A DNA stretch of 64,000 bases from Botryllus schlosseri (lineage: Eukaryota). The stretch covers positions 6,820,001 to 6,884,000 of the forward strand of contig CM119383.1 of assembly GCA_051294905.1 (NCBI GenBank), written 5' to 3'. Both the position numbers and the translations under genes were made by a program. The first letter of the stretch is position 1. Every line of letters begins with the position of its first letter. This document shows, one piece after another, positions 1 through 10,943 of this stretch. The notes beneath the pieces are model-generated. The model had not been told where the DNA came from. It saw nothing but the letters and a program-made list of their open reading frames with translations, and searched no databases.

Positions 1-330
1 TTCCCACTTTGTGATTGGTTGACTAAAAAAAAAAGGTCAACTTTCCGCTACCGTTTTTCTCTCCACATTGCTAGGTGGTTGACTAAAAAAAAGGTCAATT
101 TTTCGCTCAGAGCTCAAGTCACCGTTTTTCACTCCGAAATACCCGCCGGAGCGTCACTTCTGTGCTAATTTACGGCATATCACTCGCATTTTGCTCTAAA
201 TGTGACCTAAATTTTCAAAAAAGAGGACAAAATCTCAAAAAAGAGGACGAAAGGGCGTCCTCCGAGGACACTTTCAAAAAAGTCAAAAAAGAGGACAAAT
301 CCTCTTAAAAGAGGACGTATGGTAACCCTA
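1..330 (-). mobile_element. hAT-type MITE of the TAGG(G/C)TTACCATA family, truncated by the window edge
   Basis: Reverse-complement match to the TSD-bounded copy at 16468-16917; ends in the terminal repeat TATGGTAACCCTA at ~318-330. Confidence 0.85.
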
Positions 331-837
331 ACCATAAATTAACTAAGCGAAGAATTTGATAACATAATAAGATAACTCATTTCGAAAATATGCGTGCGGG
401 TCACTCAAAACCGTCTCGCGGGTTGGCCACCCCTGATCTGAATGATTGTTAGGTAGGCCTATCACTAAATACGCAATGCATGTCCATTGACCAATATTCG
501 TCGTCCATTGTTGCGAAATTTCTCATCCATCAATTCTCGACGGCATTCAGTTATATATTATTATTATTCTTCATTCACAGTAAGAAACTGGTCAATACAC
601 ACATAATCCGGGGAGCAACCTGCACCCAAAGGAAAATGGCGAGATTGGAGTAATTTTTTTAAAATTTCAGTAATGCAGTCAAATTGTTATTACTATATTA
701 TTATTAATATTGACATTTTTAAAGTGGTGCTTCTCGTTTTTTACAGGCTATGTGCACCACGACACTAATTTTTGTAATGTTCATATTTCTTTGTCTGTGG
801 TGATCTTGGGGACGAATTCTTCAACCTTTCTCTCAGT

Positions 838-1079
838 CAATCATCAATTCATCATGCTCTCTCGCACCCATACGTCCCCGTCGTGGTCTTTGCTGCAGAC
901 TTGTAGCACAGCTCACTTTCAATCTGGGCTTTTCAATGCACTGCAACTGCAGTGAGGTCGGCGATGAGGAGCCCAGAGAAACCTCCGACACATAGAAGTC
1001 GGTCCGAATCGGGATTCGAACCACTGCCATTGGTGTCGTGACGCTGGTGCTTAACCAACTGCGCCACTCGCTTCCCCAG
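838..1079 (-). mobile_element. tRNA-derived SINE
   Basis: Minus strand has Pol III A box TGGCGCAGTTGG (1055-1066) and B box GGTTCGAATCCC (1011-1022), then a non-tRNA body and a short TGA-rich tail. CTCAGT flanks both sides (832-837, 1080-1085), a possible TSD. Confidence 0.75.
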
Positions 1080-1154
1080 CTCAGTTATACAAGAACCTTA
1101 TAGAAATCTCCTATGTTTATAGAGCTTCTTGGAGGTACAGAACTTCAATATACA

Positions 1155-1668
1155 ATTAAATAGTATATTCATATTGAAATGAACCCGAATATTTTCGGCT
1201 GACACTCGTCAGGGGTAATCGTCAGCAACTAGTAGAGAATTGGAAAGAACATTGTATATCAACAATCGTATCACAAAATATGACGTCACCAGCATGAAAG
1301 AGAGAGCGTTCAATGTACTATTTTTAGGTGGTACACGAACTCCTTTTGTTGACAGAGTTTTGGTTGGTGTATTTTGATAAAAGTTGATTCTAAGGCACAC
1401 AAGGCCGCTCACAATTCCATTTGTGTGCCTTGGAATCAACTTTTATCAAAATACACCAACCAAAACTCTGTCAACAAAAGGAGTTCGTGTACCACCTAAA
1501 AATAGTACATTGAACGCTCTCTCTTTCATGCTGGTGACGTCATATTTTGTGATACGATTGTTGATATACAATGTTCTTTCCAATTCTCTACTAGTTGCTG
1601 ACGATTACCCCTGACGAGTGTCAGCCGAAAATATTCGGGTTCATTTCAATATGAATATACTATTTAAT
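1155..1668. repeat. Near-perfect long inverted repeat (foldback/MITE-like), 248-bp arms, 18-nt loop
   Basis: Arm 1155-1402 is the reverse complement of 1421-1668 with one mismatch seen (ctaagg vs ccttgg). TTAA lies just inside each end. The ORF track shows the same peptide on both strands (1209..1439- and 1384..1614+). Confidence 0.95.
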
Positions 1669-1912
1669 CCTATGTTTATGTGTATTTGTGTAACCTACAT
1701 TTACTTTCTGAACTTCCCAAATCAATGTACAGAAATATCTTGATCACACTTTTGTATATGCGACACTAAAATTCGCATCGTGAACTGACATACGATCAAT
1801 GTGATTTGTGTCGCGACAATGCTCAACGTACAAATGTCGTAGATCTAGGGTAATTCTCCATACTGATGCCTCGATATGCCTTTCTTGCGCATACAATTAT
1901 ACATACACTTAC

Positions 1913-4900
1913 CCCAACGTGCAAATCCTAGCCCGCACACGAAAACCACCTCCACAGTCCTTAGAGCACGTCGTCCAAGCCGCCCAAGGTTGCCAGGATG
2001 GTGTTAGGTCGTTAACGGCATTACTATCACCAGGATCAGTCGATATTGGAGTGATAGTGACTCCGGACACAGCAGTAGCCCCAAAAGCCGGCGTGGTCGT
2101 TTTGAATTCGTCCAAATCCACCGTCGTCGCTACCGATGATGCGGAAGTTACCTCGCTACCGCCTCTACCGCTCCCTCGTACTGTCGATGTAGAAGTTCGC
2201 GATACCGGAGTATTCGTAACCGTAGGATTCGGTGATAAATTCGCCGAGGAAGTGAGTTGCGAACCGCCTGCTGTAGGCCTACGCGACTGCGGTGTCCAGC
2301 TGATCGAAAATATAGAACCTTCCGTGCTAGAGGGTGTTTGAAACGGTGCCGCGGTAGGGTTTGGTATCGACACAGTGAATATCCAGGTAGGGCCTGTCGT
2401 GGTTACCGTTTGCCTTTCGCGAGGGGGACGGACAGTCGTTCTAAAATTAGCCTTGTCTGTGACCGGGCAAGGTGATAGCACACACGGTTCGCGGCGACGG
2501 CTACAACTTCTGATTATAGTAGCGTCCGCGCCTCTTTTAAGCGAGTCTTTGCACTCTCTAGTTGCGAGGCGAGTGGCGAAAGAGCCGCAAGTCACTGGGC
2601 AGCCCGTCGGAGAGATCCACCTCGTCCACGACGAGCAAAGATTTACGTTACATGGCTCGGTTTCGAAGGAAGACACGCCGTTGACTATACTGCATCGGTC
2701 GACAGCGACTGTAGTCCCGCCCAGCTTGCATTGACGAGTTCTGGCGCGTCTCCCTGGTCCGCACGCGTTGCTGCAAATTTGCCACGGCTCCCATTGAGAC
2801 CACGCTACAGAAGGTGGGCGGAAGACCGGGCGAACGGGGGCGGGACACGGGGAAAAAGTGCACTGGGCTGTGACTGAGTGACAGCTGCTTGGCCCAAGAC
2901 TGCCAAATCCCAGACATCTCCTAAATGGAAATAGACGGCGTTAAATGTGTGGCGTTGCACTCGTTTATCTAAATAGATGAGTGAGTTGCTTACACGTAGG
3001 CTAGTTATGTTTAAACAACACGAGCATTATATTTATATTAGAGGTATCATTTTATTCAGTCCGTTTCGCTGATAGTTTATGCCTACGAGAGTTATTGCTG
3101 TGAAGTATAGAGTATACTTGTTTGGAATTATACCAAAGTGAAAGCGTAGCATTGCTTTGGCGTTCTAAATCATGACTTCGGCCGTGCCAGTGACGAAGAT
3201 GGATTATAATTATGGCGGTCGATCTTTGCATGTCATGCAATGGAAAAACAATACAAAGAGCTTTCGAGAATGACGCGGCATAGGACAGTGACATGAATTT
3301 GGACAGTTTCAATATTTAACACTATCGGGCCTTGTTTTTATGGTAACTGTAACGGTTACTGCCTGATTTTTGCTCAGGACTCGAACCCTATACCAAAAAG
3401 TGTGGCATCAAGTATAAATCTTTAAAAGCTGATGGAACTGTGATACAAACACACTTCAATCAATCTGTAACTGACTTTGAGAACTTCTGCTTCCTTCCTT
3501 CGCCAAAGCCTGGATATACATTATTGTTCTCTTCACTTCTACTTTTATTGTGTGTAAGGATTGCGAACCAAGTAATTGGGATTCAAATTGGCCGGTCTAG
3601 GGAACTTCAAACTATTGCCAGGACCAGACCAGCGTATTGGTATTACGTATACGTAATACGGTCGCCATACGTAATAGTTTTACGATATTTTGTATCCGGA
3701 ATGGAGGGCACTTTTTACAAATCCTAAAAGTCAGATTACCGGAAAAACTGCTGGTTTCAAAATTAGTAGTAAAAATCTTGTGATGACTGAAAAAGTAATT
3801 TTTCCGGCTCGACTCCCGAATTACCCACTGATGTGGTATACGTGTTGACTAAAACAAAAAGGCAATTTTCCAGTCTTGTAATTCCGAATGACCCGCTCGA
3901 ACGTCCGCATTACAGATTTCACGTCATTTATAGCGTCTTTTAGTTCAGCCTGTCAAAGCTGGGTGTCAAAGCTATACGGATTTCAAAAAAGTGAGACATT
4001 TCGGCGACCTTGGAGGACATTTCCGATTTCCTGAAAAAGGATGACATATGTAACCCTATTATGGAAATTTCTCGTTAATGTTTCTATGGTCAGTTAATAA
4101 AAAACATACGGGAAATGATATTTACGGGAATGGCGTTTTCAAATTTACTGGTCTCCGCAACGAAATATACTGCTGCGAGGACCAGTCCAGTAATTTGGCG
4201 GATTTTTTTTAACAGTGTGGTCTTCATTGATGGTAAAGTAGCATCCTTCATGATAAATGGCTTTTGCGTATATACTGCATGCATGATGTCACCGAAAAGC
4301 GTCTGCCTAAATGTTCGTCTTTCGGAACTTGAAAGTAATAAATAATTCATGCATGACTGGCCATTAGGAGTTTTTGGCAACATCTTACAGCCGCATGTTG
4401 AACAGAAGACACCAATGAGGCAACAATCTTTTCTGACACATATGTAGCCTACCTGGTGGAGGTGTAAGTTCCTGATCCGCAAGTTACGGAGCATTGTGAA
4501 TTCGTCCATAACGCCCACTGGGAGCAAAGTTCCACGTTGCATATGCTAGTTTCCGTCAGATCAATTCCTCGCAGATTGCACGCCGAACTATCTGATAAAC
4601 GGAGGATTTTTTTTGCCGAAGTATGTATTTTACCTGTATCCGAACTACGTAGGAACTCACCAGGAAGCAAACACGATCTCGTTCTTGTCATAGTTCCGGT
4701 AGAGCACAGCGATGAGCAACCCGACCATTGTCCCCACTCTGTCGTAACTGGCTGTTGTCCGCCTCCCAATGATATAGCTGCAGAGCGTGTTGGACGAAAT
4801 GCAAATTTTTATTTACTCTATATTCGAATTAAGTTACGACCGTCGCATTTTTGTCAGTCACGCGATTAGAATCCAAAGGTGTTCAGTAAGGACGGCCAAA

Positions 4901-7900
4901 TAGTAGTATCAACGTTAGTTTTTCCTATTTTAGACTACCTATAGGAAGTGCACTCCAGAGTTTTTAGACTATACTGCTAGTTCTACAGTACATCTTATCA
5001 AAACTACATACTTTTTACAATTTGGATTTTGAAAATAAGACAGCAGCTTAGGATATACGTCTCCACCACTTCACTATCGCCTTACTACCGCAAGCATCGA
5101 ATTTTGCGAGTTGACGAACTATATCGCTTCGAAGTATCAAAAGTTATACACAAATATTTCTCCAATAGTTTGCCTCATGTGTTTGATGACTTTTTCGTAC
5201 CTGCTAAAAATGTCCACTCCCAATACACGAGATCCTCATCTAAGGGAAATATCTACTTGCCCCCACCCAATAATAATAAACCCAATAGTAAATCTGCTTG
5301 AATAGCAACCTAGCTAAGAGATCTATCGACTACTCACGACCTATCATCTGGAATGCATTACCACAAGATATCCGCGAATTGCCTTACAATAGATTCAAAA
5401 AAGACCTACTTAATCACCTCTTGTTGTTATACTAACACTGTTGCCCCACCTCGCCCAGACATTGCTTCATTGATCATTTGCTACCATCGTTTACTTTTTC
5501 TTTAATTTCCCTTTCAACCCAACATTTTTACAGCCAGGCTGTATAGAGCAGTGGTTCTCAACCTGGGGGGCACGCCCCCCTTGGGGGCGTGAAAGCATCT
5601 GAAGGGGGCGCGAAGAAGCGGTCAACTGAACAATATTTTCGCGTTCATCGCGATTTACCTCCAATTCACGCGTGTTTCTCTATATATAGACCGATTTTCA
5701 TATTTTTGAATTCTCTCATCAACATTGATAACCTTCGATGTCATCAAACAATCTGTTGGGGTTGCTAGCATCCCGGTTGGATTTTGTGATATGACGATAA
5801 GGGGGGCGCGAAAATTTCCACTATCATAAAGGGGGACGTGTCTAAAAGAAGGTTGAGAACCATTGGTATAGAGTCAAGTGTACCTGTTTGATGCTGGTGT
5901 GATCAGACTAGTTGACCTTCACGGTCATATCGATCATTCCTATCTGATACCAAATACTGTGCATGCATATTTTCTGTACCACCATCATTGCCGTCTGTTT
6001 TTTTTTATGTATTTTGATTGGATGAAAATAAAGACTCTATCTCTCTCTCTCACTTCTATGAGAGACATTGTCATAAGAGCCGCTTGAAATATAACTCCTT
6101 GTATCAGGGTAACTGAATCTATTTCTAAATATTCTACCTATGTACGTACGTACATACTACAGAGTGTCAATAGTCATTTTGCGTTGGTCGCGAGATAAAT
6201 CTTGCAACTTTGAAAACAGCCACCTCTGATCGCAAAATTTATACTTTTTAATACTCGAGTACTTTTGAAATCTTTCACTTGCTACCTCCAATTGAAGTAC
6301 ATGTCTTGAAAATTTCTACGTTTGTAATTGTGCAGAAATTTATGGCGTTACTTCTGTTTCTACTTGAGTAGCTACGCTGACTACTCACCTATGCGCATAA
6401 TGAATAGAGACTACATTACTTTGCATTAAGATGCACTTCCACAATTTCTAAATTTTCAGATTTGACATAACAGTCACTCATCACAACCTATAATCACCTC
6501 GGAAACAGTAAGGAGACATCTGCGGATTATAACAGCATCCATTTCGCACACAGTTCTGCCTGTCCGCCCCATATATGCATGACTGAAGGGGCGTGGCAGC
6601 GACGCAAGTGTCCGGAACGCCTCCTATCGGAGCAGAGGGTGGGTTTTGATTTTGACATTGGCTCACTATGTATGGAAAAAAGGTAATGAAATGATGGATG
6701 GAATTCCGACTCCGGAAGCGGCATTATATACTCACAGTCTTTGCTGTAGCATCGAGGACCTATGGATAATATCGAAGGGTTGTAGCAGCACCCAGCTCTT
6801 TCGCATGCGACTTGGCCCCTTGCGAATGGCGACGCCCTGCAAAATTGTCGATTCCACACATTCGTCTGACAACCACATCCTGGAATATTATATTGAGATG
6901 TTAAGCGACGTTCGGCTCATCTTGTAAGTGTGTGCGGCACCACATTTTTACACTTTCGAAATTTGTAACGCAAAAACTCCTATAAAAGGCCGAGGCATCA
7001 TAAAATATTCCCTTACAGGTTTGTCACATTAACATGGGGTGGGGTGGGTACCGTACACAGGGGTCAATCATCAAATCTCTGCAAATGTTGGAGGTGGTCC
7101 CCATTACTTCGTTTTCATGTATCTTATTCATTATGCGATTAGCTGAAAATAATCTTTACAGATAGGCGTACTTTGATGTCTATACCTAATCTACAGTGAA
7201 TAAAGTTTATAGCGCCAAATGACGTGACCTTTATATAGATAAGGGCCTCCTGGAAGGGTCGACCGCCCTCCCCAATGATAGGGTCACCACTGATCACCTA
7301 TATACCTAACGCATGGCATTTTTATACGATAATAATCAGTTACCACGCTAGAACTTGACCGTGACTTCTCGAATCCGAATATAGAGTTCAGGCTGAAACG
7401 ATTAGAGTTGGATGACAGCGCGAACACAACCCCATTCGTGAGTTGACCAGCACGTGTGGTTCAAATGACATAAATTTTTCGATGATATCGATACTATTAC
7501 AGTTGATGTTTTATGATATCTTAAATTGTGCGTAATTGTAATGACGACTTACAATTTACCACATTCCGTCACTAATCGTCAAGATTTGACGCTCGTTAAA
7601 TGCCAATTGTGTTGTATGCGGCAGTCTTATTTATAGATGTCTGATTCAAGGATCAAACATTGCCCGCTAAAGATTTCCAGACATATGCATGTGCAATATA
7701 TGGGGATCAGCATGTTAAAGGCGTATTAAAGACACGCTGCTGAGTGAGTAAGCATTTATACTTGAGTCATATCAGTGACTATAGTGCGACCACTAGAGAT
7801 CAGTGATACACCAAAGATTTTCATAAATAACACATCATCCATAATTCGATCAGTTTTTGCGGTGGTTCACGTCACAAAAACTATTTAGGTAACAACAGCG

Positions 7901-8138
7901 ACAAAAATTTGCGTCTTGGAATTAAAATGTCCGTTTCCAAATTAGCGACCTGAGATCAGACGTTATTGGTCGCGTTATTCATCCACTTGAACCGCCTTTT
8001 CGCGATTAGAGTTATTACACGAATTTAATCGCTAATTAAGGACGTAACCAATCATTCCTATTATCACCTCTTACCTGATTGTGATCTGATGCTCGGTACG
8101 AATGCTAAAAGACCGACGAAGAAAACAAAGTATGACAT
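1913..8138 (-). CDS. Secreted trefoil (P-type) + thrombospondin type-1 repeat + mucin-like protein (3' end unresolved)
   Basis: Phase-consistent GT-AG exons: 8075-8138 (signal peptide MSYFVFFVGLLAFVPSIRSQS); 6736-6879 (trefoil CQTNVWNRQFCRASPFARGQVACERAGCCYNPSILSIGPRCY); 6498-6665 (trefoil CVAATPLQSCIYGADRQNCVRNGCCYNPQMSPYCF); 4661-4777; 4453-4591; 1913-2920. TSR motifs: WGQWSGCSSLCSTGTMTRTRSC, WALWTNSQCSVTCGSG, WSQWEPWQICSNACGPGRRARTRQC, WTRWISPTGCPVTCG, WQPWAAWTTCSKDCGGGFRVRARIC. A Thr/Ser/Pro-rich stretch of roughly 150 aa precedes the last TSR. 546 codons to the last confident donor. Confidence 0.85.
3657..4058. mobile_element. Diverged copy of the TAGGGTTACCATA hAT MITE family
   Basis: Degenerate ends TACGGTCGCCATACG ... 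TATGTAACCCTA; internal GGAGGACATTT and GACTAAAACAAAAAGG motifs shared with the copies at 1-330 and 16468-16917; TSD poorly preserved. Confidence 0.55.
5060..5435 (+). mobile_element. 5'-truncated, decayed CR1/L2-type LINE (3' end of ORF2)
   Basis: Translates to SPYYRKHRILRVDELYRFEVSKVIHKYFSNSLPHVFDDFF...HSQYTRSSSKGNIYLP, then after disruption RSIDYSRPIIWNALPQDIRELPYNRFKKDLLNHLLLLY*, the typical CR1/L2 ORF2 C-terminus. Lies in an intron of the trefoil-TSR gene. Confidence 0.8.
5549..5865. mobile_element. hAT (Buster/Charlie-type) MITE
   Basis: TIRs CAGTGGTTCTCAACC ... GGTTGAGAACCATTG; perfect 8-bp TSD GTATAGAG (5541-5548, 5866-5873). Confidence 0.92.
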
Positions 8139-10943
8139 CGTAGTACTGGAACTATATAGTTACATCTATCTGTGCAGAGAATGCGTTTTACAAGCATTGT
8201 TGAGGTGAACTAGGTTGTCAACTTCAAATAGTGAGGAAGGCGAGGAGTGACATTCACTCACTGTTCTGACTCTGACATGATACTACGCCGGTACATTGCC
8301 TCGTCAAAGCTCGGTCCGCGATAAAACAAAAAAGCATGTTCAAGATACCAACGGCCTCAATCTTTGAAAAATTTGACTTAAACATTCAACTTCTCGCCCA
8401 TGATCAGATACGATGCGACCAATACAATTGGGATCAATCGAGTATTAATTATTATTATTATTATTAGATAGAAAGTATTGCCACTGAGAGTCATATTGTC
8501 AACGAGAATCATAGCTTTGATACTTCGTTCCCGCCGTCGTAGCATTGAAACATCTGATTGTCGCGTCACAGCATCCCAAACACTTACCACAAAGCTACAC
8601 ACATTAGTAGTCACAGCATTCCTGTGAATTAGTGATCGACTCGTAGTATTTTGACAGAGGGCAATGAAATCTAGGTACGGTCCAAAAACATGAAATTTCT
8701 TTAACGTGGAACGCAACTGGCGTCATTTTCTTTGCGGTCGCATAAACGTGCATGTCGTACGCATTTGAACTCCCATATAATCCACAGTTATGACGTGCTG
8801 ATAACTAACACGCGAATCACAATCGAATCACGCAGGTACTCAATGCTGCCCGGCCCTAGTTGACAATTAAATTTCGACGTCACCGCAAAGCTACATATAG
8901 GACTACAGTCAAATTTCTGCACGTATAGTCGAATTGGAGTAGGCCTACATCGAATTGCGTATGTTGTGACAGGACCTCGGGTCTCGCAAATCATAGGTCT
9001 CTGATTCGGTCCCCGCTGACTCTCTCTTTCCAAAACCCAAACGGTGGCGAGCAAAACGCGTGGGAGGTCCCAAGACCAGTTAAATTGTGGCGGCGTAACA
9101 CTTCGTTGTCTGAATCGCAGTACTAAGTACCGATCCGCTGGGACAATCGCACACACGAAAAACGCTCTTTCTTTAAATACATGTTTTTGAATGTAACATA
9201 CTTCTGAATATCTGCTGAAGTATCAATTGGTAAACTGCAGACTACCTCCGCTAAGTAGTAGGATTGCTCGCGCTTCGAAACGCCGATAAAGACTAGCTAC
9301 GAACAGTTAAAGTTTCGGCAGATATAATGGGACACAATCCGCGTTTACAACGCCTTCACTCGTGAAATTGTCCTGATTAAAGGAACCATTTCGAAACTTA
9401 TTCGTGTACCAGTATATTCCTGGTAATCGAGTCATATGCCTCGGGGTTTGAAAGTGATTTCTCTCGATTGTTTACCATGATACAACTTGATTATTGATAG
9501 AAATCACAGGCTGTGAATGCGAGTTTCATGGTCCGTAATACTGATTGTCATATTGGTTTCACTTTTGAATCTGATTGAAACCTAATGTGTGCTGATAACT
9601 CTTGATAGGAAACACCCAAAAACCATTCGAGTTATAGTAAACGTACTCCTGCAATACCAATGCATGTCGTGATGAAAGCAATCTTCAAGTTTTGTACCAC
9701 GCACTGGCAGGCTTTTGGTAAACAGTCACTTAAACCTGACCGCTAATCCATTTGTATGATATGCCTCAGAAAGGTTTAAACTCGTGCCAACAAGAGAAAG
9801 GAGGGAGACCGAAGCGTTCTCTTGGTCGGATAATCGAAGAAGTCCTCAAGGAATGCGTTCGGGGTTTCCAACGCTTAGCATGACGTAAATGAGGTATCGA
9901 TCAAAATGTCGTCTATTTCAGTTGAATGCAAGTTTCAATCATGGCAGGTTTCAATCAAACCATTCAGAAGAGTCGACTAATTTTGCGTATATAGACTATC
10001 TACGTTATCTGGACGGAGACTGAACCTTCGAAAATTTGCACACAGATGGTGATACTAATATGAAATTAGCACAATTTCTGCTCGGTCTTGTGACAGAGAA
10101 ATGGGTGTTTCCGACTCGAGTGTCATACTCAGTATGACGCCATATACACCAGTGAGAGACTCGAAAGATTCAAATATGAAGTTGAAGATATTATCGGTCG
10201 TGGTTAGTGCCAAAGTACTTTTACTTTTTAGATTACTCAAATATGGTTTATCTACTCGAACTACATGATTGTTGTTTCGATTCTCGACTCTACCAAGTTT
10301 CTATGTTTCGGAGGTTTATCCGGGCACCTCATCGCTAACCTCACTGCCATATAGCAGTGTTTCAAAAAGCCCAGAGTGGTGGTGAGCCGAGCCAAAAAAG
10401 TCGGCAGCAAAGATAAAGTTCTGGGCGCACGCAAAATGAGAGAGAGTGATGTTGAAAGCGCGGGAGTGTGGATTACGGAGGCAAAGATCCTGACCGTTAC
10501 CAATTCATTGTCGTGGAGAACATGACGTTAACAGGCGATAGCCCCCACTGCTGTATGCATGAAATAGATAAATAAAAATATTTTCATATGATCAAGACGC
10601 ACACAATGTACAATGCGATAAAACACAATGCGATGTAATGAACAGATAGGACAGTGGTTCTCAACCTTTTTGTCTTCGAGGACCCCTTCCCCCCCCCCGA
10701 AGTTATAGGTCAAATTTAGCTAAATTATCGTACAATCTCCATCTGTCTTTTGCAAATGATAACTGTAGGCTAGTGATAAACAGCAACAAAATGACTTTTC
10801 TTGAAAATAACATCATACTATATATATGCAGAAATTGAGTTGTCTTTTATTATTTCAAAGCGAATTCTGCAACTGCATTTCTTTAGAATCCGCGCCTTCG
10901 ATTTCATATGAACGAGTGCTGAAAATCCATTTAGACAAAGAAA

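What the first reader, a model, noticed from the sequence alone, without database searches (positions are those of the whole stretch)
1913..8138. Secreted protein joining two trefoil domains, five TSP1 repeats and a mucin-like spacer
Seen: a signal-peptide exon splices in phase to two complete six-cysteine trefoil domains, then TSR1-4, a T/S/P-rich stretch and TSR5. Established: trefoil domains occur in TFF peptides, frog integumentary mucins, ZP proteins and glucosidases, where they bind glycans or mucus; TSRs are adhesion/ECM modules that are C-mannosylated at WxxW and O-fucosylated. I do not recall a characterised protein with this TFF-TFF-(TSR)n-mucin-TSR order. Inference: a lineage-specific mucus, adhesive or tunic/ECM cross-linker assembled by phase-1 exon shuffling. 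The signal and both trefoil exons all end in phase 1.
Basis: partly seen in the sequence, partly recalled or inferred. Interest (0 to 1): 0.72.

Follow-up and report, generated by a model that had tools for sequence, protein, structure and literature searches.

The report
Trefoil-headed thrombospondin-repeat matrix protein gene
This is the front part of a real, expressed sea-squirt gene for a large secreted sugar-coated protein with two trefoil domains at the head, nine thrombospondin repeats in the stalk and a von Willebrand A-type domain at the tail; unnamed counterparts already sit in databases, so it is an unstudied lineage-specific matrix or mucus protein, not a new kind of molecule.

Summary
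On the minus strand, six GT-AG exons (8138-1913) encode a signal peptide, two trefoil domains, TSR1-4, a Ser/Thr/Pro spacer and the first half of TSR5. Spliced RNA contigs from two studies show all five junctions at the predicted bases, and one contig links the signal exon to exon 6.

Exon 6 ends at a donor site, not a stop. Eight more exons lie up to 13 kb beyond the window start. The full product has 14 exons and 1,121 aa: signal peptide, 2 trefoils, 9 TSRs in blocks of 4-1-2-2 separated by three mucin-like spacers, and a C-terminal VWA-like domain, which is the best conserved part.

Collinear counterparts exist in Styela clava ('uncharacterized LOC120339426') and in one transcriptome. Other trefoil+TSR mosaics occur in Ciona and Styela. 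The scan had already noted different TSR-trefoil genes elsewhere in this genome.

Both trefoils lack the Asn/Asp and Trp that contact sugar in vertebrate TFFs, so mucin-lectin activity is not implied.

The best reading is a secreted, glycosylated extracellular linker of the tunic, matrix or mucus. Where it acts is untested. It is a new variant of a known kind, of modest interest.

The parts
8075..8138 (-). Exon 1: start codon at 8138 and a 21-residue signal peptide; ends in phase 1. RNA contigs extend to 8171, giving a 5' UTR of at least 33 nt.
   Evidence: sequence and GT donor; joint 6878/9|8074/5 in X1 and X2; the only strongly hydrophobic 19-mer in the protein.
6736..6879 (-). Exon 2: trefoil domain a (aa 22-69; 7 Cys; phase 1 in and out).
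   Evidence: Pfam PF00088 24.5 bits against cut-off 21; joints on both sides in RNA contigs; also found by the whole-genome trefoil scan.
6498..6665 (-). Exon 3: trefoil domain b (aa 70-125; 7 Cys; phase 1 in and out).
   Evidence: Pfam PF00088 23.1 bits. The trefoil-to-TSR joint 4777|6498 is seen in X1 and X2 contigs and in 2 raw reads of X23. Profile and fold matches go only to trefoil proteins.
4778..6497 (-). Intron 3, filled with interspersed repeats that are very abundant in RNA contigs.
   Evidence: depth in the hundreds to thousands between about 5000 and 6150, with many loose ends.
4661..4777 (-). Exon 4: linker and first half of TSR1 (WGQW, CSSLC).
   Evidence: Pfam TSP_1 28.2 bits; joints.
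4453..4591 (-). Exon 5: second half of TSR1 and first half of TSR2; ends in phase 2.
1913..2920 (-). Exon 6 (1,008 nt, aa 211-546): second half of TSR2, TSR3, TSR4, spacer 1 and first half of TSR5. It ends at the donor GG|GTAAGT in phase 2, with no stop codon.
   Evidence: joint 2919/20|4452/3 and full contig coverage.
2632..2799 (-). TSR3 (aa 251-306).
   Evidence: WSQWEPW motif and six Cys. TSP1_CFP_C and TSP_1 hits.
2464..2631 (-). TSR4 (aa 307-362).
   Evidence: WTRW motif and six Cys.
1996..2463 (-). Mucin-like spacer 1 (aa 363-518): 156 residues, no Cys, 46% Ser+Thr+Pro.
   Evidence: It is poorly conserved (28% and 17% identity to the orthologues).
1913..1995 (-). First half of TSR5 (WQPWAAW, CSKDC). 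The second half lies on exon 7, outside the window.
   Evidence: TSP_1 26.3 bits on exon 6, best stretch at residues 310-333 of the exon.
1..1912 (-). First 1.9 kb of intron 6 (repeat-rich). The gene continues beyond the window start with exons 7-14: e7 L003:8060-8368 (C13:6818060-6818368; TSR5b, spacer 2, TSR6a); e8 L003:7151-7359 (TSR6b, TSR7a); e9 L003:2795-3132 (TSR7b, spacer 3, TSR8); e10 L003:535-694 (TSR9); e11 L004:8740-8917; e12 L004:7921-8065; e13 L004:7370-7529; e14 L004:7082-7308 (VWA-like domain, stop TAA; C13:6807082).
   Evidence: No coding continuation within 1-1912. The exons were found in the flanking DNA and join with GT-AG borders and matching phases into one 1,121-codon frame. 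That frame is collinear with a full-length transcript-derived orthologue.

Best explanation
The finding is the 5' part (6 of 14 exons) of a single-copy, transcribed ascidian gene spanning about 21 kb (C13:6807082-6828138, minus strand). It encodes a 1,121-aa secreted protein with no membrane anchor.

Domain order: signal peptide; two divergent trefoil (P-type) domains carrying 14 Cys in all; TSR1-4; a 156-aa Ser/Thr/Pro spacer; TSR5; a Thr-run spacer; TSR6-7; a Thr-run spacer; TSR8-9; and a roughly 235-aa VWA-like domain with an incomplete MIDAS motif.

Inferred mechanism: an extended, heavily O-glycosylated and probably C-mannosylated and O-fucosylated stalk holds two different binding ends apart. 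One end is a tandem-trefoil head whose ligand is not the vertebrate TFF sugar. The other is a strongly conserved VWA tail, which most likely makes a metal-independent protein-protein contact or self-association. The molecule would thus link or organise components of an extracellular material. The most likely site is the epidermis-derived tunic/cuticle or its underlying matrix, by analogy with the tunicate trefoil protein Epi-1.

Shown: gene structure, splicing of exons 1-6, domain content, conservation. Inferred: secretion, glycosylation, linker role, site of action.
For: Gene model: GT-AG borders, matching phases and one open frame.

Splicing: all five junctions of e1-e6 appear in spliced contigs from two studies and in raw reads.

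Exons 7-14: supported by full-length collinearity with P0003, a 3,558-nt transcript contig (47% identity over residues 10-898 of my 10-exon model; VWA exons 62-88% identical by tblastn), and with Styela clava XP_039263485 (33% identity). 66 of 74 Cys are conserved in all three proteins.

Domains:
- Trefoil over the Pfam cut-off twice. The only PDB sequence hits are TFF1, TFF3 and the glucosidase trefoils. All 19 Foldseek hits are trefoil proteins, the best being the two-trefoil spasmolytic polypeptide 1POS.
- Nine repeats, each with WxxW and six Cys; four carry CxxS/TCxxG.
- VWA: Pfam 32.9 bits (cut-off 23.8) in the Styela orthologue; language-model neighbours are all VWA at 0.93; Foldseek top hits are integrin I / VWA domains.

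Other points:
- No hydrophobic segment apart from the signal peptide.
- The VWA tail is the most conserved part (73% and 53%), while the spacers drift (17-51%).
- Single copy in the genome.
- Precedent: Ciona Epi-1, a tunicate-specific trefoil protein of the embryonic epidermis, is needed for a non-sticky, intact larval tunic cuticle (bioRxiv 10.1101/2024.09.30.615758).
Against: No tissue or stage of expression is known for this gene, because run metadata were coded, so the site of action is a guess.

The junctions e6-e7 through e13-e14 rest on homology and splice signals, not on reads laid here.

The VWA assignment is weak for this family. P0003 scores 21.1 bits, below the cut-off. The AlphaFold model has pLDDT 42. 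A PDB sequence profile found nothing.

The trefoil model is only moderately confident (pLDDT 65), and its fold matches have E >= 0.009.

Both trefoils lack the known sugar-contact residues, so the head may not be a lectin at all.

Epi-1 was reported to stay inside epidermal cells despite its signal peptide, and its homology to this gene was not tested.
Confidence: 0.5

Rival explanations
1. It is a component or cross-linker of feeding or gut mucus (endostyle/pharyngeal net, stomach) rather than of the tunic. The trefoil head would bind mucin-type glycans and the VWA tail would bind the net's protein scaffold.
For: The combination of trefoils with Thr-rich spacers recalls frog integumentary mucins and TFF/mucin partnerships (own knowledge). 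The genome has at least 63 trefoil exons.
Against: The Asn/Asp and Trp that bind GlcNAc-alpha1,4-Gal in TFF1-3 are missing in both domains and in both orthologues. The spacers are short (45-156 aa) compared with true mucins. There are no vWD/C8/TIL or cystine-knot polymerisation modules. No expression data.
Confidence: 0.25
2. It is a bioadhesive protein secreted by larval papillae or adult stolon/ampullae for attachment to the substrate.
For: TSP1 and VWA domains recur in marine adhesive secretions of mussels, scallops, flatworms and others (papers listed). A mussel byssal VWA protein, PTMP1, appears among the fold matches.
Against: There are no DOPA-type, Tyr/Lys-rich or other adhesive low-complexity signatures. 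The domain argument is generic. No expression data.
Confidence: 0.1
3. It is a soluble humoral recognition molecule of the blood (properdin-like TSR array with a lectin-like head) that acts in innate immunity.
For: A properdin-type TSR model (TSP1_CFP_C) scores on exon 6 and on the relatives. TSR and VWA modules occur in complement components (own knowledge).
Against: Those hits are generic to TSRs. There is no MACPF, protease, CCP or other effector domain. The mucin spacers and strict single-copy conservation fit a structural protein better.
Confidence: 0.08
4. The trefoil exons and the TSR exons belong to separate transcripts, or the pattern is a chance or pseudogene artefact.
For: None found.
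Against: Single spliced contigs in two independent studies join exons 1-6 at the predicted bases, and raw reads cross the trefoil-TSR junction. The frame is open, and the orthologues have the same order.
Confidence: 0.02

Closest known systems
Styela clava XP_039263485 ('uncharacterized protein LOC120339426', earlier auto-named 'ADAMTS adt-1-like'), and the transcript-derived protein P0003 (Logan SRR32906212 contig)
   Same: Same order throughout: signal peptide, two trefoils with 7+7 Cys, TSR blocks separated by Thr-rich spacers, C-terminal VWA-like domain. Full-length collinear alignment, with 66 of 74 Cys conserved.
   Different: Only 33% (Styela) and 47% (P0003) identical overall. Styela lacks TSR5. 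Spacer lengths differ. Neither relative has been studied.
Other ascidian trefoil+TSR mosaics: Ciona XP_018672591 (4 N-terminal trefoils + TSRs), Styela XP_039265876 (N-terminal trefoils + TSRs), Styela XP_039251978 (21 TSRs + one C-terminal trefoil); the HrEpiC-type genes noted earlier in this genome
   Same: Secreted ascidian proteins combining trefoil and TSP1 modules. The trefoil-headed ones start with the same CxC motif and also lack the TFF sugar-contact residues.
   Different: None of them has the VWA tail. The C-terminal-trefoil type keeps the canonical Asp and Trp. Repeat numbers differ widely.
Ciona Epi-1 (tunicate-specific trefoil protein of the embryonic epidermis)
   Same: Signal peptide plus P-type trefoil domains; restricted to tunicates. 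Knockout gives a sticky, fragile tunic cuticle, which is the only functional data for an ascidian trefoil protein that I found (bioRxiv 10.1101/2024.09.30.615758).
   Different: Homology was not tested here because no sequence was in hand. Its trefoil is encoded by exon 12, not at the head. It was reported to be cytosolic. No TSR or VWA domains are mentioned in the paper.
Vertebrate TFF2 (spasmolytic polypeptide) and TFF1/TFF3
   Same: Tandem trefoil pair with 14 Cys; best fold match is 1POS. The six-Cys pattern aligns with TFF1.
   Different: TFFs are small peptides made of trefoils only. The positions of the extra Cys pair differ. The lectin residues Asn/Asp and Trp are replaced by F/R (domain a) and S/Y (domain b).
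Frog integumentary mucins (FIM-A.1 / FIM-C.1)
   Same: Secreted mosaics of trefoil domains and Thr-rich O-glycosylation stretches (own knowledge).
   Different: FIMs have no TSRs and no VWA tail. No sequence relationship was tested.
VWA+TSR adhesins and matrix proteins (apicomplexan TRAP/MIC2, hemicentin, coral coadhesin)
   Same: A VWA domain combined with TSRs in an extracellular adhesive or matrix role. The TRAP VWA appears among the fold matches.
   Different: Those proteins carry the VWA at the N-terminus, often with a complete MIDAS, and have no trefoils. TRAP and MIC2 are membrane-anchored. The resemblance is convergent module use, not orthology.

Membership tests
Trefoil / P-type domain (PF00088) | Score at or above Pfam's gathering threshold | tested here: met
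   24.5 bits (exon 2) and 23.1 bits (exon 3) against a cut-off of 21.
Trefoil / P-type domain (PF00088) | Six Cys spaced C-x9/10-C-x9-C-x4-CC-x9/10-C | tested here: met
   Domain a has spacings x9, x11, x4, x11; domain b has x8, x8, x4, x8. Loop lengths deviate slightly, and each domain has one extra Cys. The pattern is conserved in both orthologues.
Trefoil / P-type domain (PF00088) | Trefoil fold | tested here: inconclusive
   The model has pLDDT 65 (78-83 over domain b). All 19 Foldseek PDB matches are trefoil proteins, but with E >= 0.009.
TFF lectins (TFF1-3) | Asn/Asp before Cys2 and Trp before Cys6, which contact GlcNAc-alpha1,4-Gal | tested here: not met
   The residues are F and R (domain a) and S and Y (domain b). 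The orthologues have F/Q and Q/F (P0003) and Q/F (P0039 domain b). Contact residues taken from PMC7221086.
TFF lectins (TFF1-3) | Small secreted peptide made only of one or two trefoil domains | tested here: not met
   1,121-aa mosaic protein.
Thrombospondin type 1 repeat (PF00090) | Pfam threshold; WxxW motif; six Cys per repeat | tested here: met
   TSP_1 exceeds 21.6 bits on exons 4, 6, 7, 9 and 10, even though introns split the repeats. All nine repeats have WxxW and six Cys; four have the CxxS/TCxxG O-fucosylation motif.
von Willebrand factor A domain (PF00092) | Score at or above Pfam's gathering threshold | tested here: inconclusive
   32.9 bits (cut-off 23.8) in the Styela orthologue but 21.1 bits in P0003. 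This gene's own domain is split over four exons and was not scanned as one piece; it is 73% identical to P0003. Language-model neighbours are all VWA, at 0.93.
von Willebrand factor A domain (PF00092) | Complete MIDAS motif (DxSxS ...) | tested here: not met
   The motif reads D-S-S-T-H here and in P0003, and D-S-S-N-Y in Styela. The last Ser is missing.
von Willebrand factor A domain (PF00092) | Alternating beta/alpha Rossmann-like fold | tested here: inconclusive
   The model has pLDDT 42. Its secondary structure alternates E/H, and the top 20 Foldseek matches, and most of the rest, are integrin I / VWA domains (E about 1e-4, TM 0.35-0.53, rmsd about 10 A). A PDB sequence profile found nothing.
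ADAMTS (name given automatically to the relatives) | Reprolysin metalloprotease and disintegrin-like domains | tested here: not met
   No such Pfam match in any exon or in P0003 / P0039.
SCO-spondin / gel-forming mucins | vWD-C8-TIL assemblies, LDLa/EMI domains, C-terminal cystine knot | tested here: not met
   None were detected. Only short PTS spacers of 45-156 aa are present.
Ascidian trefoil2-TSR-VWA family (Styela LOC120339426 type) | Full-length collinearity, same domain order, shared unique C-terminal domain | tested here: met
   The C-terminal domain was found only in these proteins and is single-copy in this genome.
Ciona Epi-1 / Halocynthia HrEpiC | Sequence homology to Epi-1 or HrEpiC | not tested
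The link is by domain type and lineage only.

The most novel reading that the evidence does not exclude
The divergent tandem-trefoil head has a new ligand specific to tunicates (for example tunic cellulose or sulfated tunic/test-cell glycans), and the conserved MIDAS-less VWA tail docks to a protein scaffold. That would make this family a dedicated organiser of the tunicate-specific tunic, a second trefoil-based tunic factor beside Epi-1.
Probability: 0.15. Interest if true: 0.55.

Novelty: new variant of a known kind. Interest (0 to 1): 0.3.

Why it matters
Tunicates built their hallmark tunic and mucus filters largely from lineage-specific secreted proteins, and few of these have been studied. 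This gene defines a small, conserved ascidian family that joins a trefoil pair to a thrombospondin-repeat and mucin stalk and a VWA tail, an arrangement I did not find among characterised proteins. Public annotation mislabels its relatives as ADAMTS or SCO-spondin-like. A corrected 14-exon model and the observation that the trefoils lack the vertebrate sugar-binding residues give concrete constructs and hypotheses for glycan arrays and knockouts. The practical value is better annotation and a candidate for tunic and matrix biology. It does not change what is known about these domains.

Tried and rejected
- Looked for the rest of TSR5 within window 1-1912. None is there, only repeats.
- First closed the model at an in-frame stop after TSR9 (898 aa). 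I rejected that once the orthologues showed a VWA tail and tblastn found its four exons. A short intron-retaining isoform cannot be excluded.
- The search for homologous proteins with the full P0003 was swamped by TSR and low-complexity words (8,000 candidates). Region searches with the VWA tail of P0003 and of P0039 returned only those two proteins, so no Ciona or non-ascidian orthologue was found. Word-index sensitivity and the length window limit what that negative result means.
- The look-up of encoding contigs found no record for P0039.
- The AlphaFold model of the VWA tail was poor (pLDDT 42), and a PDB profile search was empty.
- Paper searches for trefoil with thrombospondin and amphioxus, 'TFF domain' with ascidian, LOC120339426, and HrEpiC with Halocynthia found nothing relevant. 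What I say about HrEpiC therefore rests on an earlier AI note and my own memory.
- From genome size I first guessed amphioxus. I dropped that when the best relatives proved to be Ciona, Styela and Phallusia proteins.
- ARAGORN found no tRNA gene in 1-9000.
- A Cys-pattern regex gave false 'trefoils' at TSR junctions in five non-ascidian proteins. They were not confirmed by my HMM.
Full report
**Observation.** The feature lies on the minus strand. Translating all frames and inspecting splice signals gave six exons inside the reported span:
- e1, 8138-8075: ATG and a 21-residue signal peptide.
- e2, 6879-6736.
- e3, 6665-6498.
- e4, 4777-4661.
- e5, 4591-4453.
- e6, 2920-1913.

All are bounded by AG/GT. 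Pfam places Trefoil (PF00088) on e2 (24.5 bits) and e3 (23.1 bits), both above the curated cut-off of 21. It places TSP_1 on e4 and e6.

**RNA evidence.** I laid contigs of three older runs and raw reads of one 2026 RNA-seq run on window 2500-8250. Contigs of X1 and X2, from different studies, skip exactly 8074/5-6878/9, 6736-6665, 6498-4777, 4661-4591 and 4452/3-2919/20. Each skipped stretch reads CT..AC on the + strand, which is GT..AG on the gene strand. One 1,767-nt contig runs from 8171 through all six exons and continues 672 nt past position 2500. That is about 85 nt more than exon 6 holds. Two raw reads of X23 cross the trefoil-to-TSR junction.

**The gene is longer than reported.**
- Position 1913 is a GG|GTAAGT donor in phase 2, not a stop. 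The TSR that starts at 1995 has only its first half in the window. Nothing coding follows in 1-1912.
- The window is G000:C13:6820001-6884000. In the 20 kb before it (L003 and L004) I found exons carrying the rest of TSR5, two Thr-run spacers and TSR6-9.
- A HMMER search of 1.8 billion representatives with exon 6 gave two collinear proteins, P0003 (1,110 aa) and P0039 (1,080 aa). Both end in a VWA-like domain.
- tblastn with their tails found four more exons in L004 at 62-88% identity. The alternative donor AAGC|GTAAGG after TSR9 joins them in frame.
- The final model has 14 exons and 1,121 codons, ends with stop TAA at C13:6807082, and spans about 21 kb of CDS.
- Junctions e6-e14 rest on splice signals, phase continuity and gap-free alignment across every junction with P0003, which is itself translated from a 3,558-nt transcript contig. 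I could not lay reads there.

**Anatomy.**
- Signal peptide, aa 1-21. This is the only strongly hydrophobic segment, so there is no membrane anchor.
- Trefoil a (aa 23-67) and trefoil b (aa 73-125), each with the six canonical Cys plus one extra, 14 in all.
- Nine TSRs, each with WxxW and six Cys. Four carry the CxxS/TCxxG O-fucosylation motif.
- Three Cys-free spacers of 156, 47 and about 45 residues, with 46-62% Ser+Thr+Pro and runs of up to eight Thr.
- A C-terminal domain of about 235 aa.
- Introns split most TSRs in mid-domain. The intron phases run 1, 1, 1, 1, 2, 2, 2, 1, 0, 1, 2, 0, 1, so only the head looks like symmetrical phase-1 modules.

**Domain checks.**
- A profile of the trefoil pair hits only TFF1, TFF3 and the trefoil modules of acid alpha-glucosidase and maltase-glucoamylase in the PDB (E 0.03-0.75).
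- An AlphaFold model of the pair (pLDDT 65, and 78-83 over domain b) matches only trefoil proteins. The best match is the two-trefoil spasmolytic polypeptide 1POS (E 0.009).
- In TFF3, the only side chains touching GlcNAc-alpha1,4-Gal are the Asp before Cys2 (Asn in TFF1 and TFF2) and the Trp before Cys6 (PMC7221086). Here those positions are F/R in domain a and S/Y in domain b. They are likewise replaced in both orthologues and in the other trefoil-headed ascidian proteins. The C-terminal trefoil of a Styela 21-TSR protein keeps D and W.
- The tail is VWA-like by three lines of evidence: Pfam (32.9 bits in Styela, 21.1 in P0003); language-model neighbours; and Foldseek, whose top 20 matches are integrin I / VWA domains. 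The model is poor (pLDDT 42), and the MIDAS motif is incomplete (D-S-S-T-H).

**Relatives.**
- P0039 is Styela clava XP_039263485, now 'uncharacterized protein LOC120339426'. P0003 comes from a Logan transcriptome assembly.
- Both are collinear with this gene, at 33% and 47% identity, and 66 of 74 Cys are conserved. The VWA tail (53% and 73%) and TSR8 are the best conserved parts, and the spacers the worst. Styela lacks TSR5.
- Searches of 5.8 billion proteins with either VWA tail found only these two. The tail is single-copy in this genome, and the neighbourhood holds no paralogous exons.
- Other trefoil+TSR mosaics without a VWA tail exist in Ciona (four N-terminal trefoils) and Styela.
- This genome has at least 63 trefoil exons over the cut-off.
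- Earlier notes of this scan describe further TSR-trefoil genes elsewhere in the same sea-squirt genome. I took these as leads only.

**Mechanism.**
- Shown: a secretory-type N-terminus, modular extracellular domains, mucin-like spacers, two different terminal domains, purifying selection strongest on the tail, and transcription.
- Inferred: the protein is secreted, and its spacers are densely O-glycosylated and extended. The TSRs form short rods stabilised by C-mannose and O-fucose. The molecule bridges whatever the trefoil head binds to whatever the VWA tail binds, or to itself.
- The only functional data I found for an ascidian trefoil protein concern Ciona Epi-1. It is epidermal and tunicate-specific, and its loss makes the larval tunic cuticle sticky and fragile and removes its GAG coat (bioRxiv 10.1101/2024.09.30.615758). 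That tilts me toward a role in the tunic or epidermal matrix. Feeding or gut mucus, adhesive secretion and humoral recognition remain open, because no tissue information could be obtained.

**Comparison and novelty.**
- It is not an ADAMTS, a SCO-spondin or a gel-forming mucin. No protease, vWD/C8/TIL, LDLa or cystine-knot domains were detected.
- It is not a TFF peptide either.
- It is a member of a small, unstudied ascidian family whose Styela member is already in RefSeq without a name. The modules are all well known, and mixing trefoils with TSRs is common in ascidians. The specific order trefoil2-TSR9/PTS3-VWA is a new variant, not a new kind. Interest is modest (0.3).

**Limits.**
- The identity of the organism was not established beyond 'ascidian-like by best hits'.
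- Expression site, glycosylation and ligands are untested.
- The 3' exons lack direct read support.
- Homology to Epi-1 and HrEpiC is untested.

Noticed in passing
window 1121-1676: A roughly 550-bp element that matches dozens of places in the genome at 88-100% identity, and matches them on both strands over the same span. That makes it an internally palindromic, foldback or MITE-like repeat. It lies inside intron 6.
   Followed up: no
window 1-332 and 696-1077: Two more interspersed repeat families with many copies at 86-95% identity across chromosomes. The 696-1077 element, read on the minus strand, begins with a tRNA-like stretch (GTGGCGCAGTTGGTTAAGCAC ... GGTTCGAATCC), as in tRNA-derived SINEs. 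ARAGORN calls no tRNA gene there.
   Followed up: partly
window 5000-6150 (intron 3): Repeats with very high depth in RNA contigs of all four runs (hundreds to thousands, against about 10 for the gene's exons) and many loose ends. They include G/C-palindromic stretches around 5570-5600 and 5800-5830. These are probably transcribed transposable elements.
   Followed up: no
G000:C5:1173063-1196656; C13:8915125-8945454; C9:23509267-23510034: Dense clusters of trefoil exons elsewhere in the genome. At least 63 trefoil hits lie over the Pfam cut-off genome-wide, so the trefoil module is strongly expanded in this animal.
   Followed up: no
P0002 (Styela XP_039251978) residue 1708, compared with the trefoil-headed proteins: Two classes of ascidian trefoils. 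C-terminal trefoils on long TSR rods keep the canonical sugar-contact Asp and Trp. N-terminal 'head' trefoils (this gene, P0003, P0039, Ciona P0011, Styela P0007) have lost both.
   Followed up: partly
L003:494-535 (just past the exon 10 donor): If intron 10 were retained, the frame would run on for 14 codons to a stop. That would give an 898-aa isoform without the VWA tail. I have no evidence for or against such an isoform.
   Followed up: no
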